From Zootoca vivipara (Eukaryota): 64,000 bases of DNA. Of this stretch, positions 5,767 to 64,000 are shown in pieces (the stretch's first letter is position 1; every line of letters starts with the position of its first letter). The translations under genes were made by a program, and so were the position numbers. The notes beneath the pieces were generated by a model. The model saw only the letters and a list, made by a program, of their open reading frames with translations. It was not told the origin of the DNA and made no database searches. The stretch lies in the NCBI RefSeq assembly GCF_963506605.1, contig NC_083279.1, positions 100,998,001 to 101,062,000 of the forward strand, in the 5' to 3' direction.

Positions 5767-6004
5767 TACAGGTAGGTAGCCGGGTTGGTCTGCAGTAGTT
5801 GAAACAAAATAAATAAAAAATCCTTCCAGTAGCACCTTAGAGACCAACTAAGTTTGTTATTGGTATGAGCTTTCGTGTGCATGCACATGCACATTTTGTG
5901 TGCATGTGGTATCTGAATAAGTGTGCATGCACACGAAAGCTCATACGTATGACAAACCTAGTTGGTCTCTAAGGTGCTACTGGAATGAATTTTTTATTTT
6001 GTTT
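5767..6004. mobile_element. Penelope-like fold-back insertion with mutated hammerhead (5909-5946)
   Basis: Inverted arms of about 85 bp, left arm with extra tail TACAGGTAGGTAGCC...; 13-bp TSD CAATTGTGCATTT at 5750-5762 and 6005-6017; core reads CTGAATA instead of CTGANGA. Confidence 0.78.
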
Positions 6005-6374
6005 CAATTGTGCATTTGAATGATTATTCTTAAAGTCATCACACGAGTAATCACTTTTGTTCTTACATGGAGAATTTAAACCACAAAAGTACAATGTCTG
6101 TGCACAATATATGCATTGCAAAAGCAGTAACACACTGCCTCTGCAGCAGCAGCATCGCCACCACCTCACCGCTCAAATAACATTTCTAAGGTTTCTCAGG
6201 AGTCAGTGAACTACGCTTTGTGTCAGCTGGGCAATGCTGGTTATAACAAACGACAATTTAATGTTAACAGGTGACTGAGTGGTTTGGTTAACAGGTGACC
6301 CAAAGCTGTACAGAAGGAATGAAACGAAGACTGCAAATAAGAACATGAGAAGAGCCTGCAGGATCAGGCCAGTG

Positions 6375-8677: not shown

Positions 8678-8821
8678 TCCTAGAATTGTAGAGTTGGAAG
8701 GGACCCCAAGAGTCATCTAATCCAACCCCCTGCAATACAGGAATCTTTCCCCCAAACATGGGACTCAAACCCACAGCCCTGTGATTAAGAGTCTCGTGCT
8801 CTACCGACTGAGCTATCCCAG
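8678..8821 (-). mobile_element. SINE with tRNA-Lys(CTT)-like head and CR1-type tail
   Basis: On -: GATAGCTCAGTCGGTAGAGCACGAGACTCTTAATC...GGGTTTGAGTCCC then CR1 3' end; acceptor stem and B box damaged. Confidence 0.7.
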
Positions 8822-10540
8822 GGATAGATATTATGATTATCATAACACCTCTCAGTCTCTTTTCCAGGCTAAACATACCCAGCTTTCTCAAATGAAGGTT
8901 CTTACATTCTTTAAGGGAGGTTGCCAGCAATCCGGCTGTGCAAGAAGAGATTTGCTGATGCAACTCTGCCTGCTCCCTCTCCATAACAAGTGATGATGGC
9001 AAAAGGCTTCTCAGATGTAAAATAAATATATTTTATTGACCAAATAATACATGCCAGAGCTGTGCTGTAGCTGTAAATAATGCCAGGCTGTGGGCTGGGT
9101 AGCAAGGAAGGAATTTGCACCCGCTTTCCCCACCCTGGAGCCCCAACGGAGTTGTAGTCCAAAACACCAAGCTGGCAGGAGTGGGCAGGTTGGGGAAGGT
9201 TGTTACATACAAACCCAAATGGCACCAAGGAAAAGCAGCTGATGCCACTTCTTCCTTCCCAGGGCTGGGCAAGTAGAATCATAGAATGGATTTGTTTATT
9301 ATTTAGGCATTGCATAAAATTTAAGCACTACCGACTGGGACCAAATGAAACTATAACCTAATCAATAAAACTAACAATAACCTAAAAACAGAATAAAGCA
9401 GACATCAACATTCTACATTTCTGGACAGGCTTGTCTAAACAAGAATGTTTTCAGTAGGCACCAAAGAGTACATTGAAGTCACCTGCCTCTGACAAGGCTT
9501 CCCACCTGCCAGCAATTCTGTGCTAACTGCAGCCTCCAGATACTTAGAAATAGAGGTAGAGAAGAGAAGCTGCTTGATTGCTGCTGTGAACTTCTCTGTT
9601 CATCCTGCTGCTATTTTGTTGGGCAAGATTAAGACCAGCAGCACCCAAAACATGCTCACCAGGAAATAAGTTCCCCTGAACTCCTTGGGAACGACTCCAT
9701 CCTAAGGGAGCATGTTCAGAATGGGACAAGACACCTCCTCCTCCTCAGGAATCCTTTCCCCTGAGAAGCAAACCAGCCTCCTGTGTTTTCAGGTCAGATA
9801 TCAGAGGGAAACAGGAGGAGAGTCTCACATTAGCCAATGAAGAGCCAATGGGAGATTGCAGGAAAAGATGCATGGAAGCAGAATAACTAACCGGATTAAT
9901 TCTGCGAGATGCTGAGGGTTCCAAGGAACCTGCAGGTCACATCCAACTGCAGTGCAGACACCAGGGCCGGGAGTTGCCCTCAGGACTTTGAAAGCCAGGG
10001 CCCCAAATCCTCATTGTTTTTAGGTGACACATTTTATGAAGATTACCGCTCCCTCATGCAGGCAGGAGAAACCCAACCCTAATCTCAATGGCTCCCTTTG
10101 AGCAAAGTCCCTGTCACTCCAATTATATCAGGCGCTCCTTTGTGTGAACCAGTTGGGTCCACCCACCTGGCACCTTCCTTCTGGTGCTTCCAGCCCTCCT
10201 CTGAATGAAGGTGGCAAACACTGCCAGATCAGAACATAAGAAGCACCACCAGAATCCTGGGAAATAACCCCTAGAGTTTTAGAGCTTGATCACCTATTGC
10301 TAATCATGATGCAAACTGACAACAAAGGAGCGAAACCTGCTTCCCTGAATTTTGAGCAAATAAAGAACATTCAGAGCATGGCAGTTTTCCAAAATGCATT
10401 CATCGGGGGTTCAGGGAACATGGATCTGTTCATTCCAGGTGATGCCCACAATAAAAATCATGCAAATCTTTTGATTCTGTAATGCGAGGCTCAAGCAAAA
10501 CATCTCCAGCAGAATATTGTTATGAGTTTGTGGGGGGGCT

Positions 10541-33522: not shown

Positions 33523-33652
33523 NNNNNNNNNNNNNNNNNNNNNNNNNNNNNNNNNNNNNNNNNNNNNNNNNNNNNNNNNNNNNNNNNNNNNNNNNNNNNN
33601 NNNNNNNNNNNNNNNNNNNNNNNNNNNNNNNNNNNNNNNNNNNNNNNNNNNN
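33523..33652. other. Run of 130 N (gap or masking)
   Basis: Read directly. Confidence 0.98.
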
Positions 33653-34093: not shown

Positions 34094-34229
34094 NNNNNNN
34101 NNNNNNNNNNNNNNNNNNNNNNNNNNNNNNNNNNNNNNNNNNNNNNNNNNNNNNNNNNNNNNNNNNNNNNNNNNNNNNNNNNNNNNNNNNNNNNNNNNNN
34201 NNNNNNNNNNNNNNNNNNNNNNNNNNNNN
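34094..34229. other. Run of 136 N (gap or masking)
   Basis: Read directly. Confidence 0.98.
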
Positions 34230-37280: not shown

Positions 37281-39563
37281 GTATAAAGTGGTATAGAAAT
37301 GAAGTGGTATAGAAAGTGGTATAGAAATGAAATTAATAATAATAATAATAATAAATATTTATTATTTATTCTTCCTCTTACTCACTTGTGTTAGTTTAAC
37401 ATCTAGTTAGCATCACTTTGCAGCATGAAATGTGGAAACTTCTGAGACAAGGTTGCTTATCCTTATTACGTTATTAATTATCTAGGATGCTTTTTCCTTC
37501 TAAACAAAATAATCACACAGAAGTCTGTAATGCATTAATAAAAATATTGTTTAGTTACATAAAGCTTCAGTCTTGATTCTATTCATCAAAATACAACTGA
37601 AAATAAATAAAATTTAAAGCATTTAAAAAAACTGTTAAAAACATCAGAACACAATATCTAAAACAATCTAAGAGCAGGTGTCACCAAATCATGTGAGGAA
37701 TTCAACGTTGAATGTTCTACCAGTGCAAACATTTCACCTTGACTAACAGAGCAACCCGCCTCTCCTTCCCACACATGCTATTCTGGTGCTTTTGCTGGGC
37801 CCCCAGAGCCAACTTCAGGGGTCACAGGAGGTGTGCAGGTGTGGAAGCCACAATGGCTATGCTCTGCCTCCACAGCTGGAGGCAGGAATGCTTCCAAATA
37901 CCAGTTCCTGGAGACCACAAGAGGGGAGAGGGTTCTTGCACAAAGGCACTGCTTGTGGGCTTCCCCTTGAGGCACCTGGCTGGGCACTGTGAGAAGAGGA
38001 TACTGGACTAGATGGGAGGATTCATTAGTTTTATCCTACCCAAAGTGTCTGGATATACCTACTGAAAGAAAAACATTTTAAGCAGGCATCTCAGAGTACA
38101 GTGATGGTGCCTGCCTAATGTCACACAAGCTGCCTTGAGCCAGTGTGTTAGTGTACGACAGGCACGTCCAGCAGGCAGATCGTCTGTGGTAGATCAGTGG
38201 TTCCCCACAAAGAAGCTCAACAACTTAGGCCTTCCTATAAAAGCTCAACAACTTAGACCTGAACCCCCTTGGGAGTTGGCACCCCAACTAGATGCACAAC
38301 CCATATGGGAGATGGGCACCTGGCTGCATTTTCTCTCTCTTTTGTACTTGAGCTTCCCACCAGTGAAGATGGCAGTAATCACCCAGAATGTGCCCATAAT
38401 CAGCACCAGTTCCCAGGAGAGGGAGCAGGTCTCCCAAAAGAGATTCGCAAGCATCCACTTAAACCTTCTCTGGTTATCTCAGCAAACACAATGACATTGT
38501 GCAAACAAGACCGGTATTTTCATTGTACACAGCCGAACAAACCTCTTAAGACTTTCATAGGGGTAAGTTTTGCTAATTTTCATTTAGCTTCCTTCATGGA
38601 AAATTCATTCCCTCCTCCCAAAAATATTCTGATTCTAGCTGTTTTCAACTGAATGGGCTGTTATTTTTCCTTGCTTAGGGTACCCATTTCTTTATTCAAC
38701 TTGTAGCTCAGGGAAAGCTGTGATTCAAACCTCGCATGGTGCTGGACTATGCAGTTCTATGATTTGAGGAAGTGGGGGTTGGGGCAGCGGTTGTTGCTTT
38801 CATGCCTGCTTGTGGACTTTCCTTTGTGGACTTTGTGGGAAAGAGGGTTCTGGACTAAGTGGGCTTGCTTTGGTCTTCTCTAGCAAAGCTCTCCTTCTTA
38901 AAAAAAAGAGCCCTGAATGACAGAGAACAAGGGTGTGCAAACAGCACAGGCATCACAGATCCTGCTGGAGAGCACGTTCTTGTTTTCGGCTACATTTTCC
39001 TTCTATATCCCAGTCCTAACAGAATGGAGTTTTAATAGGACTCCAGTGCAAGAAAGACAAATGGTTGCCAACAGAGGAAGAGCAGAACCTAGTAAAAAGC
39101 ATATGTGGTGTATGGTGACCATGTTCTCCAAGCCCAAATGCTTTTCTTTAGCAAAAGATGCAACCTTGGTGCATTAATCCCTCTCTCTCTTGTTCCAACT
39201 GGCATGGGGGAAAATGGGACAGGGCTCAAACTGAGAGCTGCTGCTGTTAATTTTATGGTTTTATCTTTTTTGTAAATGGTTTCGAGTTTTTTCCTACAAT
39301 CGTGTGAGATAGAAATTGTAGGAAATAAATAAATAAAATAAAATCTATTGCTCTGCCAGGCTCCATCAAGCTGCTCCCTCTTACAGTGAAAGTCACACGA
39401 TATCCAAGGACAAAATATGACCAATCTTCATTTCATTAAAAACTCGCAGAGTAGCAGAAGCCTAATAAACTTGACAACTGGATCAGCAGGAATATGGCAA
39501 AGTTGAACAGAGATGCTCTGATGCCAGAGGCTGGAGGCAGAAACAAAGAGTCCACTGTGTGCC

Positions 39564-40541
39564 ATGTTGCCGGTCAATGGCAGTGGTGCCCAGCAGCATC
39601 CTGCATTCTTCCTCCTGGTGGGCATACCAGGCTTGGAGTGGGCGCAGGCTTGGATTGCCATCCCTTTGTGCATCATGTATGTCATTGCAGTCCTGGGAAA
39701 CAGCATCATTCTCTACGTGATCAAGACTGAGCCCAGACTGCAGGAGCCTATGTACCTTTTCCTGGCCATGCTGGCCATCACCGACCTGGTTCTTTCCACC
39801 TCCACTGTGCCCCAAATGCTGGCTGTTTTCTGGCTCAGTGCTGGGGCCATTGACTTCCATGCCTGCCTGGCCCAGATGTTTTTCATCCATGCCTTCTCGT
39901 CTGTCGAGTCGGGAGTGCTCATGGCCATGGCTCTCGACCGCTATGTGGCCATTTGCTACCCGCTCCAGCATTCGGCCATCCTCTCCTTGCAAGCCATAGG
40001 AACCCTGGGCAGCCTCGTTCTTCTGCGTGCAGTTCTCCTCATCAGCCCCTTTGCCTTCCTGGCTCACAGGCTTCCCTACTGTGGCCACCAATTCATTTCC
40101 CACTCCTACTGTGAGCACATGGCTGTGGTGAAGCTGGCTTGTGGGAATATCCAGGCCAACGTTGTTTATGGCCTCTTTGTGGCTTTTGTGGTAGTTGGAT
40201 TCGATATCTTCATCATTGCTATGTCCTATGTCATGATCCTCAAGACCGTATTGAGACTCCCATCCCATGAGGCTTGTCTGAAAGCCTTTGGGACCTGTGC
40301 ATCCCATATCTGTGTTATTCTTTCTTTCTATATTCCAGCTCTCTTCACTTTCCTCACTCACCGGTTTGGCCACAATGTCCCCCACCACATCCACATTATA
40401 GTGGCTATACTCTACCTTCTGGTGCCCCCCGCTTTGAATCCTGTTATATATGGGGTGAAAACCAAGATGATCAGGGAGAGGATTCTCACTATATTCCTTA
40501 TTTCAGGCAGGCAAAGGACAACTTTCGGGGAGGGTACATAG
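39564..40541 (+). CDS. Class I olfactory receptor, OR52-like (325 aa)
   Basis: LVGIPGLE, MALDRYVAICYPL, OR52 signature HSYCEHMAVVKLAC, KAFGTCASH, THRFG, PPALNPVIYGVKTK. Confidence 0.95.
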   Translation: MLPVNGSGAQQHPAFFLLVGIPGLEWAQAWIAIPLCIMYVIAVLGNSIILYVIKTEPRLQEPMYLFLAMLAITDLVLSTSTVPQMLAVFWLSAGAIDFHACLAQMFFIHAFSSVESGVLMAMALDRYVAICYPLQHSAILSLQAIGTLGSLVLLRAVLLISPFAFLAHRLPYCGHQFISHSYCEHMAVVKLACGNIQANVVYGLFVAFVVVGFDIFIIAMSYVMILKTVLRLPSHEACLKAFGTCASHICVILSFYIPALFTFLTHRFGHNVPHHIHIIVAILYLLVPPALNPVIYGVKTKMIRERILTIFLISGRQRTTFGEGT

Positions 40542-42363: not shown

Positions 42364-44092
42364 AACCATGTATCCTAGTTGCTGCTGGTGCACCCTTCCA
42401 ACTGTGTAGCCTGTACTTTGAGATGATGCCGAGACCACCTGCTCATTCCATTAATAAATCTTTGGGATTTCCTGAGTTGAGAGCCTGAGTCTTTCATCCG
42501 AAGGTGAGAACCAGCAGAGCTGTGAGTGTATGATGAAACCCTGAGAGGAAGCCATAAAGAGAGAAAACAGCCTAAACTACTGATCCAGAGGGAAATCTTG
42601 TGCTTTCAGAACCACTGGGGCCATCTGCACACAGTGCGGCACTGAAGGAAGCTGCATAAATGCTCCTCTCTACTCTTAGAGTATAGAAGGACATAAGAAG
42701 AGTCTGCTGTGTCAGACAATGTCTAGCATCCTGCTTCCCACAGGGAACAGCTAAGGGGTTGGACACACAAAGGCCGATGGTTCCTCCTCCTGCTGTTGCC
42801 CCCATGAAGTTACCATGTTTGTTTCAAGCGCCTGTTACTCAGCACCAGAAGTGAGTATCACCACTAGGTTACTCTGGCTGACACCTAGGACCTTCACTTG
42901 CTTTTGAGCACTGCACAGAGCCCCATAATTTGGTTCTGTACTGGATTTTGTTAGGCTGTGGCTTAGTGCAGGGCTAAAAGAACGCCAGATCTTGATGGTC
43001 TGAGGTCTTTCTTTCTAGAGGGTAAAAAGATCATTTGGGTACTTTTTTATTATTACCAGGAAATTGGAAGGGGTGGGTGAGAGACCTCCAGCACCACCAC
43101 TATGAGTTGGACCTAAGGGAGTCAAGATTAGGCAATTGTGGGGTGTTCCAAGGACTCCCTATTACATTGCTAAGTGGAAAGTGGCTTACAAACACTATCT
43201 GAGTAAGTGAAAGAAAATCTAAAGTACAAAGCAATGCCAGTGACCCTATTAGTTTAATGCAATAACAATACAGACCCCAGCCAGGAGGATGTGCGTTGGT
43301 TTTTTTAAAAGCACTGGAGGATATTGGACACACACTCAATGTTTTACTTTCTCTGTACTTTCTGTAAGCTGGTTTTTAGTAAATAACAGTTTCAGAAAAT
43401 GACAAATGTTTTTTTTAATTACATTATCAAAAATTGTATGCCCATTGACTCAGTGTATATGTGTGTGCGTGCATAAGAAAGTAAGTAAATAAAATATGCC
43501 TTTTAAAAATACCATATACCAGCAGCATGTGCAGGAAGTTCTAGGAGAGGTTGATTTTAGAATAAAGATAATGCACTCGTTGAACCAATTTACTGGAGTA
43601 CTGACCATGATGGCCAGAAAATACTGCTCCCCCCAAAAAAAAGAGAACCCAACAAACAGCATCTGAGAGAACAATGTCATTCTGTTAGGATATTTCCGGA
43701 ATTAGGTGCAAGGAAACATATACATATATAAAGTTCTAGTAGGTAATGCAAGAACATCCTGTTTTCACAGTGGCCAAACAGATGCCTGTGGGAAACCCAT
43801 AAGCAGGACTCAGACACAAGAGCCCTCTCCCCTCCTGCAGTTTCTAGCAACCGGCATTCAGAAGCGCTGCTGCCTCCAACTGCAGTGATACAATGTTTTA
43901 TTCTATGTCTTTGCCGCGGGATCACATTCACCCAGTGCTATACCAGCTGCACTGGCTCCCAGTGGAGTATAGGGTCAGGTTTAAGGTGCTGGTTTTAACC
44001 TTTAAAGCCTTATACGGCCTAGGACCCTTGTACCTACAGGACCGCCTCTCCTGGTATGTCCCATGGAGGACCTTACAGTCTGCAAATAACAA

Positions 44093-44341
44093 AATAAAAA
44101 AATTCCTTCAGTAGCACCTTAAAGACCAACTAAGTTTTTATTTTGGTATGAGCTTTCGTCAGATACTCTGCTCAGATGAAGGGTGGTATATAAATGTAAT
44201 TAAAACAAAAAGAGTATCTGACGAAGTGTGCATGCACACGAAAGCTCATACCAAAATAAAAACTTAGCTGGTCTTTAAGGTGCTACTGAAGGAATTTTTT
44301 TATTTTGCTTCGACTCAGACCAACACGGCTACCTACCTGTA
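44093..44341. mobile_element. Penelope-like fold-back insertion inside an L2 fragment
   Basis: Inverted arms, right arm with about 35-nt tail ending ACCTACCTGTA; 14-bp TSD TCTGCAAATAACAA at 44079-44092 and 44342-44355. Confidence 0.82.
44214..44251 (+). ncRNA. Minimal type I hammerhead ribozyme (Penelope-like element), intact core
   Basis: GTAT-CTGACGA-A-GTGTGCATGCACAC-GAAA-GCTC-ATAC: helix I GTAT/ATAC, CUGANGA and GAAA boxes, palindromic helix II, AGCT helix III. Confidence 0.8.
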
Positions 44342-45389
44342 TCTGCAAATAACAACACCCTGAAGATTCCAGGCCCCAGGGAGATTAGACTGGCCTCGTC
44401 CAGAGTCAGGGCCTTTTCAGACGTGGCCCTGGCCTGGCAGAACGCTCTCTCACAAGAGACCAGGGCCCTGCAAGATTTGGCATCCTTCCGCAGGGCCTGC
44501 AAGACGGAGCTGTTCCACCAAGCCTTTGGTCAGGGTTCAGTCGGACTCATTTTCTCTTTGTATAAGAACAAGCATGAAGGAGGTTTCCCAGCTCGCTCAC
44601 AGGTCCTTATAATATCAGTGGAAACAGTTGGTCCTGGCAAGTATTAACTGCTTTCAATTTTATCCTGAGGATTGTTATTTGTCCAGTTTTAACTTTAACT
44701 TTAATTTATTAGTATTAATTTTGGGATGCATTTTAATCAACTGATTGCTTGTTTTTATGCACATTGTATTACTGGGTATTTATATGATGTTAGCCACTCT
44801 GAGCCCAGCTCCAGCCGGGGAGGGTGGGGTACAAATAAATAAATACATGACAAGGGTTGGGGGTTGTTGAGGTGGGAAGAAAATGTCGATAATAGAGAAG
44901 TGGCTCAGCAGCATCTAACAATGTTTATCTCCCCGCTTTCTTCCATGCAACTCAAGGCTGTGTCTGTAGGAATACCCACTCCACTCGATATGAGAATAGG
45001 GGAGACACTTGCCCAGCACACATCGCTGCCCTTCACTGCACCAAATGTCAATTATGATAGATGTGCTTCAGCCCCACTGGAACCAATGTGGAAAGTTTAG
45101 CACATGACTTAAGTCCAATTTGATTTCAGTGGCAGCTAAACACAATTCACCGGGTGTAACCCACACTATCGAGATTTCTCTAAGAGAGCAATTTTTTCCA
45201 TGCATTATTTTCAAGTAAGCACAACTGTTTACCATATTATGTATTTTTGTGTTTTTATATTGTAAACTGCCCTGTGATCCTCAGATGAAGGGTGGTATAT
45301 AAATGTAATTAAAACAAAAATAAAAATGGAATTCAATAGGGTTTACTGCCACATAAAAAAGCAGGGGCTTGGCCTGCTAGAATGAAATA

Positions 45390-45958: not shown

Positions 45959-46912
45959 ATGATGTATGTGTTTAACGGGAGTCATGCCACCCCCTACTCT
46001 TTTATCCTGCTGGGTATCCCTGGTCTGGAAGCGTCCTACTACTGGCTCTCCATCCCTCTTTCTTCAATGTATGTCATCACATTGCTAGGAAACTGCACCA
46101 TACTGTATACAATCAAAACAGAGCAGAGCCTCCACAAGCCCATGTACATCTTCCTCTGCATGCTCGCCGGCATAGACCTGGTGCTCTCCACCTCCACCCT
46201 GCCCAAGATGCTCTGCATTGTCTGGTTCCGAGCTGGGGAAATAGACTTTGGTGCCTGCATGGTCCAGATGTTCTTCATCCACTCCTTCTCCATCATGGAG
46301 TCGACAGTGCTTGTAGCAATGGCCTTTGACCGTTACGTAGCTATTTGCAATCCTTTGAGATATGACTCCATCCTAACCAACCCATTGCTGGCCAAGATTG
46401 GAGCAGGGGTCATCCTGAGAGGCACAGTCTTTATCATCCCAATCATCATCTTGGCAGCCCGTCTTCCATACTGCAAGACCAACGTCATCCCCCACACATA
46501 CTGTGAGCACATGGCTGTGGTGAAGCTGGCCTGCTCAAGCATCCTTGCCAATGTTGTCTATGGGCTTCTGGTGGCTCTCCTTGTGGTGGGGGTGGATTTG
46601 CTGTTCATCACTTTGTCCTACTGCATGATTGCCAGGGCTGTCATGGCTCTGCCATCAAAAGACGCCCGCTATAAGGCTTTCAGCACCTGCGCAGCTCACG
46701 TGGTAGTGATCCTGGTCTCCTACACCCCAGCTCTTTTCACCATCTTAACACACAGGTTTGGCCATCATGTGCAGCCTCATGTTCACATCCTTCTGGCCAA
46801 CTTCTACCTCCTTTTCCCACCCATGCTGAACCCCATTGTGTATGGTGTGAAGACCAAGGAGATCCGTGAGCGAGTGACCCACATAGTTCTCAGGAGGAAG
46901 CGACCTACATAA
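45959..46912 (+). CDS. Class I olfactory receptor, OR52-like (317 aa)
   Basis: LHKPMY, MAFDRYVAICNPLRY, HTYCEHMAVVKLAC, KAFSTCAAH, THRFG, PPMLNPIVYGVKTKEIR; acceptor CTCTTCCCTCCACTGCAG ending 45918. Confidence 0.95.
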   Translation: MMYVFNGSHATPYSFILLGIPGLEASYYWLSIPLSSMYVITLLGNCTILYTIKTEQSLHKPMYIFLCMLAGIDLVLSTSTLPKMLCIVWFRAGEIDFGACMVQMFFIHSFSIMESTVLVAMAFDRYVAICNPLRYDSILTNPLLAKIGAGVILRGTVFIIPIIILAARLPYCKTNVIPHTYCEHMAVVKLACSSILANVVYGLLVALLVVGVDLLFITLSYCMIARAVMALPSKDARYKAFSTCAAHVVVILVSYTPALFTILTHRFGHHVQPHVHILLANFYLLFPPMLNPIVYGVKTKEIRERVTHIVLRRKRPT

Positions 46913-47998: not shown

Positions 47999-50074
47999 GA
48001 CTATAGTTAGCCTCAGGCAGGTTATATTACCCAGGTACTGTTCTCCTATAAGAGCTGGTGATGACTCCCTCAGGTGGATGCAGAAGCAGCATGGAAGGCA
48101 GAGGTGACCGTCTCCATAGCCTGTGTCTTCACCCAGCCAGTGGGATTGGGCTTTTTAGGGCTAGAATTACAGTCAATTGCATGAAAGAATACATTCTCCC
48201 TTGAAGACCTGCTGAGACTTTGGACCCAGCTTGGAAAGTAAGCTGGGCTGGCTTTTAAAGACAGGGAAGTATAGGCTGAGAGGCAAAGGCTGCTGTTAAA
48301 ACATCAATTTAATCTTTTAGCTGAAAGCCCCCTTGCTAGGTCTGGGGCGATGGATGCAGCAATGCTTTTGAATTACAGGTGCTGGAAACCACAGGAGGTG
48401 AGAGAGGTGGTCCTCAGGTCCTTCTTGCAGCTTTCCCACAGGCATTTGACTGGCCATTCACTGTAAGAATATGATGCTGGACTAGTTGGGACCCCACTGG
48501 CCTGATCCAGAAGGGCTCATCTTATATTCTTATGCATACTCTCTAAGGGAAAGCAAGAGTGAGCTTTCAACACATAACTGATATGCCCAACAGAGACATG
48601 TCATGTCATAATGTATTAGGAAAACAGATTCTGTAGAAGCTGGCAATATGAATTTGACATCTAGTCCACAGATTACCTGTGCAAATTCCACAAAGGATTT
48701 ACTTGTTGTTTAACGTTCTCCACATGCACACACCCCTGGATAATTCCCTAGGGAAGAGCATCACATCAGAAATGAGCCAGGAATAGACAGGCAAAGCAGA
48801 TGAAGCAAGGCGGGTGAGACTTCTGTTTTTGATGTTTTCCAAGCTCCTCCCTCAGGAAGCTTGAAGCATCTACTAAGTTAAAACAATAAAATCACACGGC
48901 TGGGTCTTAAACTGTTAATCATGTTAAGTACTGTATATGTCTCTGTAAAATAGATGGGCTTATTTTGAGAAAAAGTAGAGTTGGCACCTTTTTTCTGCTG
49001 TATCTCATGTCAGAATCTCCTGTCTCTTGCTACCTTATGCCTTTGACTGGAGATGCCGCTAGGAATTGAGCCTGGGACCTCCTGCATATTTATTTATTTA
49101 TTTCTTAAATTTATATACCTTACCACCTTTTATTTCAAGGAGCTCATGGTGGTGTACCTGGTTCTCATCTCCCCATTTCACCCTCACATCAACCCTGTGA
49201 GGTAGGTGAGGCTGAGAGACAGTGACTTGTCCGAGATTGCCCAGTATGTTTCATGGCCAGGTGGGGATTTGAACTCCTGGGCCCTGCAACTGGACTATGG
49301 GTCCTCACTATTTACATATCCAGTTGGGGAAAGCTGCATCTGTGAACTTTTGCCAGGTATCCAGCTGTTAAAAGGCCTCAGGAGCCTTATCGCCAGCTGC
49401 TACTCTTATACCAGCAAAGTAAGAAGGGGCAGATTTTTCAAAAATCAAATTTGCACAATAGCTGCTTAGGTCAAAGCAAATCTTTCCCCTGGAGCAGAAG
49501 AGGCAGGCTGAAGAGTGTCACAGAATCATAGAGTTGGAAGGTATCCCAAGGGTCATCTAGTCCAACCCTCTGCAATGCCAGAACAGCTAGTGAGGAACAA
49601 CAAGGCAGGAGACAGCAGAAGCAGCTGGGGGGGGGGGGGGTTGGCTGAGATAACTATACACATTTTGCAACTTGACTAAATGAAGAAAATATCACTGAAT
49701 GCTCAATTAACGTTAGCATCCTTTAAATGTAGGCAGCCAGGCACACTAGAGGATAAACAGCTCTGAGTGAGCACTGGTATCTATCACATTCCTGAGTGCT
49801 GTTACCCCACACTTAAATTTTCAACTGTTGTATCCCTGCCAACCTTCACCATCAGGCCCTGCTGAAAGCTTGTATTTCTTCCTGCCAGCAGGAATGGGGT
49901 TGAGGCTAATTTATACCTGCTGGTGGAAACAAGACCTCAAAATGGTGATGTGAAATTTTGCTGGATGCAGAACATGCCCGTTAACTGTTGCCTGCCTCCC
50001 CTACCTCCAGATTAACAAGAAGCTTCTCCTTTGCACAGGCCATAGGAGGAGTCCCAAGGCCCCTCCAGTCTAAT

Positions 50075-51034
50075 ATGTCTGCCTCTGGCAGCACCTACAA
50101 TGGCACCCTACACCCTTCAATCTTCCTCCTGCTGGGGATCCCAGGGCTGGAGGCGGCCCACGTCTGGCTGGCCATCCCCCTCTGCTTCATCTACGTGGTG
50201 ACTGTGTTGGGGAACTGCACCATCATGTTCATCATCTGGGTGGAAGAGATCTTGCATGAGCCCATGTACTTATTCCTCTGCATGCTGGCTGTCGTTGACC
50301 TGGCTGCATCTACCACTGTTGTGCCCAAAATGCTTTGCCTCTTCTGGTTTGGCTCACGAGAGATTCGCTTCGAAGCCTGCTTGACGCAGATGTTCTGCAT
50401 CCATGCGCTGTCCATCATCGAGTCAGCCGTTTTGTTGGCCATGGCCTTTGACCGCTACATGGCCATCTGCCAGCCACTGCGCTATGCGGCCATCCTCACA
50501 AATCCTGCCATCGTGAAGATTGGCTGCTTGGCAGTTGCCAGGGGAGCCATTCTGACTGCCCCATTCCCCATCCTTGCCAGCAGGCTGCCCTACTGCCGAA
50601 CCAATGTCGTCCCCCACACCTACTGTGAGCACATGGGCATCGTCAGGCTGGCCTGCTCTGGCACTGTGATCAGTAACATGTACGGCTTGACCGTGGCCTT
50701 GCTGGTGGTGGGTCTGGATTTAATGTTCATCGGTGTGTCCTATGCAAAGATCATTGTGACCGTGCTGAGGCTGCCATCTCGGGAGGCCCAGGCCAAGGCC
50801 TTCAACACCTGTGGCTCCCACATCTGTGTGATTGTCTTGGCCTACACACCTGCCCTCTTCTCCTTCCTCACACACCGCTTTGGCCACAACGTGGCCCCCT
50901 ACATTCATATCCTCATCGGCAACTTCTATATTCTGGTGCCTCCCTTCTGCAATCCTATTGTCTATGGTGTGAAGACCAAGCTGATCCGTGAAAAGGTGGT
51001 CAGCTTACTCCTGAGGAGAAAAGATGTCTCCTAA
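50075..51034 (+). CDS. Class I olfactory receptor, OR52-like (319 aa from ATG at 50075)
   Basis: The ORF-track start at 49988 is a TTG upstream of acceptor CTTCTCCTTTGCACAG (ends 50038); first ATG is 50075 (MSASGSTYNGT). LHEPMY, MAFDRYMAICQPLRY, HTYCEHMGIVRLAC, KAFNTCGSH, THRFG. Confidence 0.93.
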   Translation: MSASGSTYNGTLHPSIFLLLGIPGLEAAHVWLAIPLCFIYVVTVLGNCTIMFIIWVEEILHEPMYLFLCMLAVVDLAASTTVVPKMLCLFWFGSREIRFEACLTQMFCIHALSIIESAVLLAMAFDRYMAICQPLRYAAILTNPAIVKIGCLAVARGAILTAPFPILASRLPYCRTNVVPHTYCEHMGIVRLACSGTVISNMYGLTVALLVVGLDLMFIGVSYAKIIVTVLRLPSREAQAKAFNTCGSHICVIVLAYTPALFSFLTHRFGHNVAPYIHILIGNFYILVPPFCNPIVYGVKTKLIREKVVSLLLRRKDVS

Positions 51035-56211: not shown

Positions 56212-61196
<4,985 letters not shown>

Positions 61197-63295: not shown

Positions 63296-63422
63296 CCCTG
63301 AGATCTCTTGATGAAGGGCAGTATATCAACTTAATAAATAACCATAACAACCGCCATGCATTTTTAGTCCATTAAATCAGCAATTCAGCATTTCTGGAAG
63401 GGTAAATGGCATACTTTTGTAT

Positions 63423-63537
63423 ACAGGTAGGTAGCCGTGTTGGTCTGAGTCGAAGCAAAATAAAAAAATTCCTTCAGTAGCAACTAAGTTTTTATTTTGG
63501 TATGAGCTTTCGTGTGCATGCACACTTCGTCAGATAC
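63423..63537 (-). mobile_element. Penelope-like single-arm insertion
   Basis: Same family as 44093-44341; 12-bp TSD ATACTTTTGTAT at 63411-63422 and 63534-63545, overlapping the element end. Confidence 0.8.
63500..63537 (-). ncRNA. Minimal type I hammerhead ribozyme (Penelope-like element), intact core
   Basis: Reverse complement GTATCTGACGAAGTGTGCATGCACACGAAAGCTCATAC, identical to 44214-44251. Confidence 0.8.
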
Positions 63538-64000
63538 TTTTGTATGTTTGCATAGCAAGTATTGGTTATTCATGAGGAGAATATGATTTACTTATTTTGA
63601 ACTTCGCTTGGTTCCTCCTTGGTAGCCAGTGTGATTATTTCAGCAGGGTTAGAACTCGGGACCCGCTGCCTTGAGGGACATCTAAGAGCAGAATGGCAGG
63701 GGAAAGGTCTCCCTTTGGAGGTGATGGACTCTCCTTCCTTGGAGGTTTCTAAGCAGAGATCGGACAGCCACCTGCCATTAATGTTTTAGCTGAGATTCCT
63801 GCATTGCTGGGGGTTGGACTAGATGACCCTAGGATCCCCTCCTATCTCTCCACTCCTGAATTCGAGGAGGGGGTTCCTTGCTTCCTGCAAAGCCCTTTTC
63901 CCTGCAAGCTGTTCCTCTGGTTTCTGGCCAAGGGAGGGAGATGCTCAGAGCCCAACCAAGAGCCTCGCCTCCAAAAAGAATCTCTGGCCATTGGCATAGC

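What the first reader, a model, noticed from the sequence alone, without database searches (positions are those of the whole stretch)
44093..45320. Hammerhead-bearing fold-back element carries an exact 41-nt copy of DNA from 1.1 kb downstream
Seen: the spacer between the two inverted arms (44171-44211, CTCAGATGAAGGGTGGTATATAAATGTAATTAAAACAAAAA) is identical to 45280-45320. The whole unit sits inside a 14-bp TSD, so it looks like one insertion event. The captured piece starts with CTCAGAT and the left arm contains TCAGAT (44159-44164) next to its end. Other window copies of this repeat tail (about 85-120 on -, about 63305-63335) differ at several bases. Inference: during integration the reverse transcriptase or a repair polymerase jumped onto nearby chromosomal DNA or nascent RNA of this locus. 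If general, these elements record local sequence between ribozyme arms.
Basis: partly seen in the sequence, partly recalled or inferred. Interest (0 to 1): 0.78.

Follow-up and report, generated by a model that had tools for sequence, protein, structure and literature searches.

The report
Penelope fold-back with locally copied filler
A young head-to-head insertion of a short Penelope-like retroelement, sitting between olfactory-receptor genes, carries at the joint of its two arms an exact 41-base copy of an older repeat tail 1.1 kb away; it is a single footprint of how such elements are stitched into DNA.

Summary
44171-44211 equals 45280-45320 exactly, with no other match in the window at up to 3 mismatches. 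A 14-bp target duplication frames a 249-bp fold-back.

The fold-back is an ordinary Penelope-like element (PLE) insertion. It has two inverted copies of a ~128-nt terminal unit, a 34-37-nt "tail" on one arm only, and a minimal PLE-type hammerhead at 44214-44251. Rfam does not detect that hammerhead. This scan had already noted such fold-backs elsewhere in this genome (s1-855404, s1-853479) and one with a non-Penelope spacer (s1-849491).

The 41-mer is filler lying exactly between the arms. Both arms end 2-4 nt beyond the family's usual 5' end. The donor is a 5'-truncated copy of an abundant repeat and is also present at the same site in a second organism, so copying ran donor to filler.

A local donor is favoured by proximity and by the copy-specific A/T-rich tail. 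It is not proven:
- The first half of the 41-mer lies in a repeat core with summed contig depth 500-1800 times single copy.
- The second half was masked by the reads tool.
- No read spanning the joints was seen.

Capture of unrelated DNA between PLE repeats is already in print (PMC3846280).

The parts
44079..44092 (.). left copy of the 14-bp target-site duplication
   Evidence: D3, 100% identical to 44342-44355
44093..44170 (-). tail-less, antisense arm of the Penelope-like unit (78 nt). Its outer end lies at the inner of the two usual 3' ends. Its inner end lies 4 nt beyond the family's usual 5' end. It lacks the 17 nt that hold hammerhead helix II.
44171..44211 (+). 41-nt filler at the head-to-head joint, identical to 45280-45320. 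The last A could also belong to the right arm (1 nt of overlap).
44212..44341 (+). sense arm of the Penelope-like unit (130 nt), 2 nt beyond the usual 5' end at 44214. Its 3' end at 44341 is where other copies also end.
   Evidence: loose ends before 44214 and behind 44341
44214..44251 (+). minimal PLE-type hammerhead motif: helix I 44214-17/44248-51, core 44218-24, extra base 44225, helix II 44226-31/44234-39, GAA 44240-42, palindromic AGCU 44243-46, C17 at 44247
   Evidence: read against the features listed in PMC4209133; not detected by Rfam
44308..44341 (+). 'tail': the A/C-rich 34-37-nt extension present on this arm only
   Evidence: PMC8557442 and PMC11167929
44342..44355 (.). right copy of the target-site duplication
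   Evidence: D3
45238..45335 (+). 5'-truncated copy (about 98 bp) of an abundant repeat ending in an A/T-rich tail; host of the donor sequence; present at the same site in organism B at least up to 45291
   Evidence: loose ends before 45237/45238; bins 45225-45326; record 16
45280..45320 (+). donor 41-mer
63421..63538 (-). solo copy of the same unit, with tail, starting at the usual 5' end, in a 12-bp target duplication
5767..6005 (-). older fold-back of a related subfamily: tailed arm 5767-5887 (minus strand), 21-nt spacer 5888-5908, tail-less arm 5909-6005; about 13-bp target duplication

Best explanation
WHAT IT IS (near certain). 44093-44341 is a young insertion of the short terminal unit of a Penelope/Poseidon-type retroelement. 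It was laid down in the way typical of these elements, as two inverted copies inside one target duplication.

HOW IT FORMED (inferred from the published in-vitro behaviour of an Anolis element). The element's protein nicked both DNA strands 14 bp apart, and each 3' end primed reverse transcription on element RNA. One priming used the outer of two internal start sites and gave the arm with the tail. The other used the inner start site and gave the arm without the tail. Both cDNAs ran to the usual 5' end of the short RNA.

HOW THE FILLER AROSE (inferred, moderate confidence). The two cDNA ends cannot pair with each other. While they were being bridged, the polymerase switched template without needing homology and copied 41 nt from the tail of an older repeat copy 1.1 kb downstream (its DNA, or RNA made from it). 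It then continued on the other cDNA.

FUNCTION. The filler is a scar of integration and has no function. The one intact minimal hammerhead is a family feature, and nothing here shows that it cleaves.
For: Family and architecture:
- The arms, the 14-bp target duplication and the tail on one arm only are shown.
- The same two-ended design is seen in 2 of 2 fold-backs in the window, and a solo copy has the same 3' end.
- Craig 2021 (PMC8557442, passages) describes inverted 5'-truncated copies and a 30-40-bp tail at one end as typical of PLEs.
- Frangieh 2024 (PMC11167929, main text) shows that an Anolis Poseidon protein nicks and extends both strands. It starts reverse transcription at two internal sites in an A/C-rich stem-loop 111-118 nt into the ORF, and the tail is the stretch between those sites.
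- Here the 3' end lies 110 nt after the ATG at 44232, counted from the ATG position, and 94 nt after the hammerhead cut site.
- The hammerhead features match those listed in PMC4209133.

Abundance and ends:
- Arm bins reach about 63,000 times single-copy summed depth in X1.
- Many contigs end with unrelated A/T-rich flanks before 44214 (74/46/160/31 in X1/X3/X9/X12). For flanks behind 44341 the rows shown give 48 (X1) and 39 (X9); no row is shown for X3 or X12.
- So 44214 and 44341 are the unit's usual ends, and both arms reached the 5' end.

Filler:
- It is exact and sits precisely between the arm ends, with 0 and 1 nt of overlap.
- The donor copy is in its repeat context and is shared with organism B (record 16, 19 differences over 484 nt).
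- This element subfamily is much rarer in organism B: bin 44256-44306 is about 920 times single copy there, against about 28,500 times in X1. The donor is therefore probably older than the insertion.
- The A/T-rich tail half differs in all 4 other tail copies aligned from the window.
- Even with 2000 exact copies in a genome of 1.5-2.5 Gb (size assumed), the chance of one lying within 1.2 kb is 0.002-0.003.
Against: - The number of exact 41-mers genome-wide is unknown.
- The bin holding the donor has summed contig depth 519-1790 times single copy at 90% likeness or better, so its first half belongs to an abundant repeat core. The tool skipped 45300-45336, which holds the second half.
- Only contigs were available. 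No record bridging either joint was listed, so the assembly of the spacer is unverified.
- The finding was picked because of the coincidence, which is a selection effect.
- Template jumping by a PLE reverse transcriptase has not been shown; PMC3846280 only proposes it.
- The two arms differ at 44129/44268, a site where the family is split C/T (45% T in X1). Yet they share an unusual A next to the 5' end, so it is unclear whether one RNA or two were copied.
- The 3'-end position matches the published Anolis element only roughly, and I had no sequence of that element to compare.
Confidence: 0.55

Rival explanations
1. Non-local donor. The polymerase jumped to the 3' end of an RNA, or to another DNA copy, of the same abundant repeat family. 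The identical copy 1.1 kb away would then be a coincidence.
For: - The donor belongs to a family with hundreds to thousands of copy-equivalents at 90% likeness or better (bins 45225-45326).
- 117 contigs in X1 start matching at 45237/45238 (table 7).
- The filler ends inside the A-rich tail, where a retroelement RNA could end.
- The joints have 0-1 nt of overlap, as in end-to-end template jumps.
- The finding was selected for the coincidence.
Against: - The chance of a copy within 1.2 kb is at most about 0.003 even for 2000 exact copies (genome size assumed).
- The local copy is old (shared with organism B), so it should differ from an active master. The tail half varies in 4 of 4 other window copies, yet the match is 41 of 41.
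- The best other window copy is 79% identical.
Confidence: 0.17
2. Later repair. The element first inserted as a tighter palindrome. A break at its centre was then repaired by a host polymerase (theta-type end joining or microhomology-mediated template switching) that copied nearby DNA.
For: - Long palindromes are fragile (recalled knowledge).
- Templated fillers that map near a break are the mark of polymerase-theta joining (PMC10923293, passages).
- A spacer-less 136-bp palindrome of this family is noted elsewhere in the genome (s1-853524, unchecked).
- There is a 17-nt deletion near the centre, between two 5-nt repeats.
Against: - Both arms still reach 2-4 nt beyond the family's usual 5' end, so nothing was resected at the centre.
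- The joints have 0-1 nt of microhomology, whereas theta-type joints average more (2.4 bp in PMC10923293).
- Those fillers 'oftentimes map to the immediate flank', not 1.1 kb away.
- The 17-nt loss is internal to one arm and does not bridge the centre.
Confidence: 0.13
3. Artefact or homogenisation. The spacer is an assembly or polishing error in a palindromic region, or the two 41-mers were made identical by gene conversion.
For: - PLE tandem and inverted structures are known to trouble assemblies (PMC8557442).
- No bridging read or contig was seen.
- The window contains two runs of N.
Against: - The structure is clean and typical of the family: exact target duplication, arm ends at the family's usual ends, one tail.
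- The X1 contig 44811-45263 matches the window with 0 differences.
- A 41-bp conversion tract with sharp ends and no flanking homology is unlikely.
Confidence: 0.07
4. The fold-back together with this spacer is itself a multi-copy unit, so the 41-mer is part of a subfamily consensus.
For: The spacer bin 44154-44204 has a high summed depth in organism A (35311 in X1).
Against: - That depth is about 60 times lower than in the arm bins. It is explained by repeat-family contigs and arm ends.
- Joints between arms in other copies fall at many positions with other letters between them (tables 5 and 5c).
- The helix II deletion and the spacer are not seen in the other 2 window copies.
Confidence: 0.03

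Closest known systems
Poseidon/Penelope-like elements of lizards (PAc of Anolis carolinensis; Frangieh et al. 2024, PMC11167929, main text read)
   Same: - A hammerhead lies at the start of the copied region.
- The 3' ends fall at two nearby internal sites, which gives a 30-40-nt tail on one end only.
- Insertion is by nicking and extension of both strands.
- 5' truncation occurs, and flanks are A/T-rich.
   Different: - This copy is only a 128-nt terminal unit in two inverted copies, with no ORF.
- The ATG lies in loop II and the cut site 16 nt after it, against 26 nt in PAc, so this is not the same family.
- No PAc sequence was on hand to compare.
Minimal hammerheads of metazoan PLEs (Cervera and de la Pena 2014, PMC4209133, passages read)
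   Same: - Helix I is short (4 bp) and helix II is long (6 bp).
- There is an extra base between positions 9 and 10.1.
- G10.1-C11.1 is present.
- Positions 15.2-16.2 are palindromic, with no real helix III, so activity would be expected only as a dimer.
   Different: - Cleavage was not tested.
- The second arm has lost helix II.
- Rfam models do not score the motif.
Capture of unrelated or host DNA between Penelope terminal repeats in Adineta vaga (Arkhipova et al. 2013, PMC3846280, passages read)
   Same: Non-element DNA is enclosed between element repeats inside one target duplication. The authors invoke self-priming and template jumps.
   Different: - There the pieces are long (0.9-1.5 kb spacers, whole genes) and lie between direct repeats, and no donor next to the insertion is reported in the passages I saw.
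- Here the piece is 41 nt at a head-to-head joint, with the donor 1.1 kb away.
Twin priming and 5'-junction template jumps of LINE-1 and R2 (recalled; only a search listing seen for PMC8857657)
   Same: Two primings on opposite strands give inverted halves. Reverse transcriptases jump end-to-end to other templates with little or no homology.
   Different: - The enzyme class differs (GIY-YIG endonuclease, telomerase-like reverse transcriptase).
- In LINE-1 the two halves come from different parts of one RNA and are not mirror copies of the same end.
Polymerase-theta templated insertions, or 'filler DNA' (PMC10923293, passages read)
   Same: A short stretch copied from a nearby template appears at a repaired joint.
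   Different: - Typical fillers map to the immediate flank and come with microhomology and loss of sequence.
- Here there is 0-1 nt of overlap, no loss from either arm, and the donor is 1.1 kb away.

Membership tests
Penelope-like element insertion (endonuclease-bearing clades) | An inverted 5'-truncated copy abutting the element, which forms an inverted repeat | tested here: met
   the feature is as described in PMC8557442
Penelope-like element insertion (endonuclease-bearing clades) | A 30-40-bp 'tail' extension present at one end only | tested here: met
   34-37 nt (44305/44308-44341) on the right arm only. The older fold-back 5767-6005 shows the same.
Penelope-like element insertion (endonuclease-bearing clades) | A target-site duplication framing the whole unit | tested here: met
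   14 bp, exact. The other two window copies have 12 bp and about 13 bp.
Penelope-like element insertion (endonuclease-bearing clades) | A hammerhead motif in the terminal repeat | tested here: met
   Hand parse of 44214-44251 against the features listed in PMC4209133. Rfam was negative.
Penelope-like element insertion (endonuclease-bearing clades) | An ORF with a telomerase-like reverse transcriptase and a GIY-YIG endonuclease (in the autonomous partner) | not tested
   The 249-bp copy cannot encode it. The only ORFs of 200 aa or more in 40-50 kb are three olfactory receptors and one ORF antisense to the first of them. No autonomous element was looked for.
Penelope-like element insertion (endonuclease-bearing clades) | 3' ends at the two internal reverse-transcription start sites of the A/C-rich stem-loop (111-118 nt into the ORF in PAc) | tested here: inconclusive
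   The 3' end lies at +110 from the ATG at 44232, counted from the ATG position, and 94 nt past the cut site (85-92 in PAc by the paper's numbers). Equivalence of the ATGs was not verified.
Hammerhead ribozyme (Rfam hammerhead models) | A score at or above the family's gathering threshold | tested here: not met
   No hammerhead family appears at gathering score in the window or at E up to 10 in 44050-44400.
Hammerhead ribozyme (minimal PLE type) | Self-cleavage, expected only as a dimer or with protein | not testable with these tools
   PMC4209133 and PMC11167929 report low or protein-assisted activity for such motifs.
Polymerase-theta templated insertion | Microhomology at the joints and a template in the immediate flank | tested here: not met
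   0 and 1 nt of overlap; the donor is 1109 bp away.

The most novel reading that the evidence does not exclude
After both cDNAs of a Penelope-type double priming reach the 5' end of the RNA, the element's reverse transcriptase bridges them by end-to-end template jumps and copies whatever free 3' end is close in space. Here that could be a second nick made by the element's own A/T-preferring endonuclease at 45320|45321, which lies in an A/T-rich run. Fillers of fold-back insertions would then be a natural record of off-target nicks, or of the spatial neighbourhood, at the moment of integration. With tens of thousands of copies in this genome, that record could be read genome-wide.
Probability: 0.15. 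Interest if true: 0.6.

Novelty: new member of a known kind. Interest (0 to 1): 0.3.

Why it matters
How Penelope-like elements finish integration is unknown. Frangieh et al. [quoted passage not shown] 2021 call the tandem and inverted structures unexplained.

This copy is clean and young. Both arms are complete to the RNA's 5' end, and a filler with an identifiable donor lies 1.1 kb away. That shows the joint is made by copying, not by annealing, and hints that the template is taken from nearby.

On its own this is an anecdote. Its value is that it points to a cheap genome-wide test: map the fillers of all fold-backs.

Tried and rejected
- Rfam at gathering score on the whole window and at E up to 10 on 44050-44400 found no hammerhead family. 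The microRNA-precursor hits all lie far below their gathering scores and simply reflect a long hairpin, so I rejected them.
- Folding the 128-nt unit alone shows no unusual stability: z = 0.46, and 128 of 200 shuffles fold as well. The whole fold-back folds as a hairpin (z = -18.95), which is trivial for an inverted repeat.
- TCAGAT as a switch point is rejected as evidence. It has about a 4% chance occurrence and is not at the joint.
- I looked by eye for microhomology that would let either cDNA end prime on the donor's flank. There is none on the left and 1 nt on the right.
- A genome-wide count of the 41-mer was not possible:
  - Read laying returned Logan contigs only, summed depths that 'are no copy number', and skipped 45300-45336.
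  - The search of earlier findings by sequence gave nothing, and per the operators a blank there means nothing.
  - An exact scan of metagenome contigs gave 0 hits, which is uninformative for an animal genome.
- I could not find an empty allele or an independent copy of the locus.
- Literature: I searched 'Penelope-like' with 'template jump' (7 papers), Penelope with template switching and filler (31 papers at 3 of 4 terms, 15 listed), and 'Penelope-like' with hammerhead, inverted and tail (8 papers). None that I read reports a short filler with a nearby donor at a head-to-head joint. Supplementary files, which hold the junction data of PMC11167929, were not seen and may bear on this.

Full report
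OBSERVATION

The 41-nt stretch 44171-44211 is identical to 45280-45320 on the same strand. At up to three mismatches these are the only two matches in the 64-kb window, and none of 100 shuffles gave a match (D1). A perfect 14-bp direct repeat (44079-44092 and 44342-44355) frames a 249-bp unit, 44093-44341.

The unit consists of three parts:
- a 78-nt left arm (44093-44170);
- the 41-mer;
- a 130-nt right arm (44212-44341).

Read on the minus strand, the left arm equals the right arm apart from one mismatch (44129 against 44268) and a 17-nt gap between two 5-nt repeats. That gap removes the palindrome of hammerhead helix II. The right arm runs 34-37 nt further outward than the left arm. The whole unit folds as a hairpin, as any inverted repeat does.

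WHAT THE ELEMENT IS

Two more copies of the unit lie in the window.
- 63421-63538 (minus strand) is a solo copy. It starts at the same 5' end, ends at the same 3' end with the tail, and sits in a 12-bp target duplication.
- 5767-6005 is an older fold-back of a related subfamily. It again has one tailed arm and one tail-less arm, an approximately 13-bp target duplication, and a different 21-nt spacer that resembles helix II itself.

In contigs of three studies of organism A, the arm bins reach about 63,000 times the single-copy summed depth (X1: 2,095,339 against 33.2). The tool warns that this figure is not a copy number. Many contigs run into unrelated A/T-rich sequence just before 44214 (74, 46, 160 and 31 contigs in X1, X3, X9 and X12). 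Rows for loose ends just behind 44341 are shown for X1 (48) and X9 (39) only. So 44214-44341 is the usual unit of a very abundant family.

The published description of Penelope-like elements fits point by point.
- Craig et al. 2021 (PMC8557442, passages) describe strong 5' truncation, an inverted 5'-truncated copy abutting the element, and a 30-40-bp tail at one end only.
- Arkhipova et al. 2013 (PMC3846280, passages) describe the same features with 8-10-bp target duplications.
- Frangieh et al. 2024 (PMC11167929, main text) show that a Poseidon element of Anolis nicks and extends both strands. It starts reverse transcription at two internal sites in an A/C-rich stem-loop 111-118 nt into the ORF, and the tail is the stretch between those sites.

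Here the ATG inside helix II is at 44232. Counted from it, the 3' end at 44341 is +110 and lies 94 nt past the hammerhead cut site; the paper's numbers give 85-92 for PAc. The tail-less arm ends about 35 nt further in. I had no sequence of the published element, so I claim the same kind of element and not the same family. Earlier notes of this scan reached the same family assignment for other pieces of this genome (s1-855404, s1-853479); I treated them as leads.

THE HAMMERHEAD

Rfam finds no hammerhead at gathering score in the window or at E up to 10 in 44050-44400. By hand, 44214-44251 has the following features:
- a 4-bp helix I;
- the CUGAnGA core;
- one extra base before helix II;
- a 6-bp helix II that begins with G-C;
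- GAA;
- a palindromic AGCU in place of helix III;
- C at the cleavage position.

These are the features that Cervera and de la Pena 2014 list for minimal PLE hammerheads, which are expected to act only as dimers (PMC4209133, passages). The left arm has lost helix II, so the motif is intact on one strand only. Nothing here shows cleavage.

THE FILLER

Relative to the usual 5' end at 44214, the right arm extends 2 nt further and the left arm 4 nt further. The 41-mer fills exactly the space between them. Overlap with the arm is 0 nt on the left and 1 nt on the right. Neither arm has lost sequence at the centre.

The filler is not part of the element family. Contigs from other copies join antisense and sense arms at many different positions. 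In the 12 of 315 'letters between' rows shown, 1-20 letters lie between the arms: 11 rows have 8 or fewer, and the 20-letter one is element sequence (tables 5 and 5c).

THE DONOR

The donor lies in its natural context.
- 45238-45335 is the 3' end of a repeat. In X1, 117 contigs start matching at 45237/45238 while carrying a different, shared upstream sequence, so this is a 5'-truncated copy about 98 bp long (table 7).
- A 505-nt contig of organism B runs from unique sequence at 44808 to 45291, with 19 differences and 21 gap letters. The repeat copy therefore sits at the same site in a second organism (record 16).
- This element subfamily is far less abundant in B. Bin 44256-44306 is about 920 times single copy in B against about 28,500 times in X1.

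Copying therefore ran from donor to filler, and the donor is probably older than the insertion. The second point is inferred, because I could not see whether B has the fold-back.

LOCAL DONOR OR NOT

For a local donor:
- The distance is 1109 bp, on the same strand.
- Even if 2000 exact copies existed in a genome of 1.5-2.5 Gb (size assumed), the chance of one lying within 1.2 kb is 0.002-0.003.
- The A/T-rich half of the 41-mer is the kind of tail that differs in all four other tail copies aligned from the window. The best other window copy of the region is 79% identical.
- An old copy should have drifted from any active master, yet the match is 41 of 41.

Against a local donor:
- The bin holding the donor has 519-1790 times the single-copy summed depth at 90% likeness or better, and the bin before it has 1577-5742 times. 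The first half of the 41-mer therefore belongs to an abundant repeat core.
- The tool skipped 45300-45336, so nothing is known about the second half.
- Only contigs were available. With 31-letter words they break at a 41-nt repeat and at inverted arms. No record bridging a joint was listed, so the assembly of the spacer is not independently confirmed.
- The finding was chosen because of the coincidence.

I put the local donor at roughly three to one over a non-local one.

MECHANISM

The structure and the direction of copying are shown. What follows is inferred from PMC11167929. Two nicks 14 bp apart leave two 3' ends. Each primes on element RNA, one at the outer and one at the inner start site, and both cDNAs reach the RNA's 5' end. 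The two cDNAs have the same sense and cannot pair, so a bridge has to be synthesised.

A filler with 0-1 nt of overlap at both joints and no loss from either arm fits a homology-independent template switch better than theta-type end joining. Theta-type joining shows microhomology, loss of sequence, and fillers that often come from the immediate flank (PMC10923293, passages). The same facts argue against a later break at the palindrome's centre.

Several points remain open:
- whether the template was DNA or RNA;
- whether the donor's 3' boundary in an A/T-rich run reflects a second nick;
- whether one RNA or two were copied. The arms share an unusual A next to the 5' end but differ at a site where the family is split C/T, with T at 45% of depth in X1.

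The 17-nt loss of helix II may be a skipped hairpin during copying or a later slippage. The region lies between olfactory-receptor ORFs on the same strand. That gives no particular support to a nascent-RNA donor.

COMPARISON AND NOVELTY

The element, its fold-back form, its tail and its minimal hammerhead are all known. Capture of unrelated DNA between Penelope repeats inside one target duplication is in print for a rotifer, with template jumps proposed (PMC3846280).

What is particular here is a short filler at a head-to-head joint with an identifiable donor 1.1 kb away. In the papers found and read in part, I saw no such case.

VERDICT

This is a good, young example of a known kind of insertion. 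It carries a single, unverified but suggestive footprint of local template switching. Interest is 0.3.

Noticed in passing
window 57926-58016, 60020-60112, 60722-60818 (+): Three SNORD35-like C/D-box snoRNAs (51-53 bits, gathering score 36). They presumably lie in introns of a host gene at the end of the window.
   Followed up: no
window 8750-8822 (-): A tRNA-like match (39.2 bits, gathering score 29). Whether it is a tRNA gene or a SINE head was not determined.
   Followed up: no
window 39564-40541, 45959-46912, 49988-51034 (+): Three intact olfactory-receptor ORFs (Pfam 7tm_4, E about 1e-109 to 1e-114). The fold-back and its donor lie 1.6-1.9 kb and 0.64 kb upstream of the middle one. An antisense ORF of 303 aa (39483-40394) overlaps the first receptor and is probably meaningless.
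   Followed up: partly
window 5767-6005: An older fold-back of a related Penelope subfamily. Its 21-nt spacer (5888-5908) looks like a partial copy of the helix II palindrome, so it appears self-templated rather than foreign.
   Followed up: partly
window 44103-44341: The summed depth of this Penelope subfamily, relative to single-copy bins, is far higher in organism A than in organism B (for example about 28,500 times against about 920 times in bin 44256-44306). This suggests a burst in the lineage of A.
   Followed up: no
window 44268 (and 44129): The only mismatch between the two arms falls on a site where the family itself is split: C in the window and T in 45% of summed depth in X1. This hints that the arms were copied from two different RNAs.
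   Followed up: partly
window 44811-45263: Single-copy contigs of organism A differ from the window at 0 (X1), 3 (X3) and 6 (X9) of 453 positions, so within-species diversity is fairly high here. Organism B differs at 19 of 484.
   Followed up: no
window 43900-44860: The fold-back is inserted into an older, abundant repeat that ends in the same kind of tail near 44800-44850. Its bins reach up to about 6,800 times single-copy depth in X1.
   Followed up: no
window 33523-33652, 34094-34229: Two runs of N (130 and 136 bases). They were left untouched.
   Followed up: no
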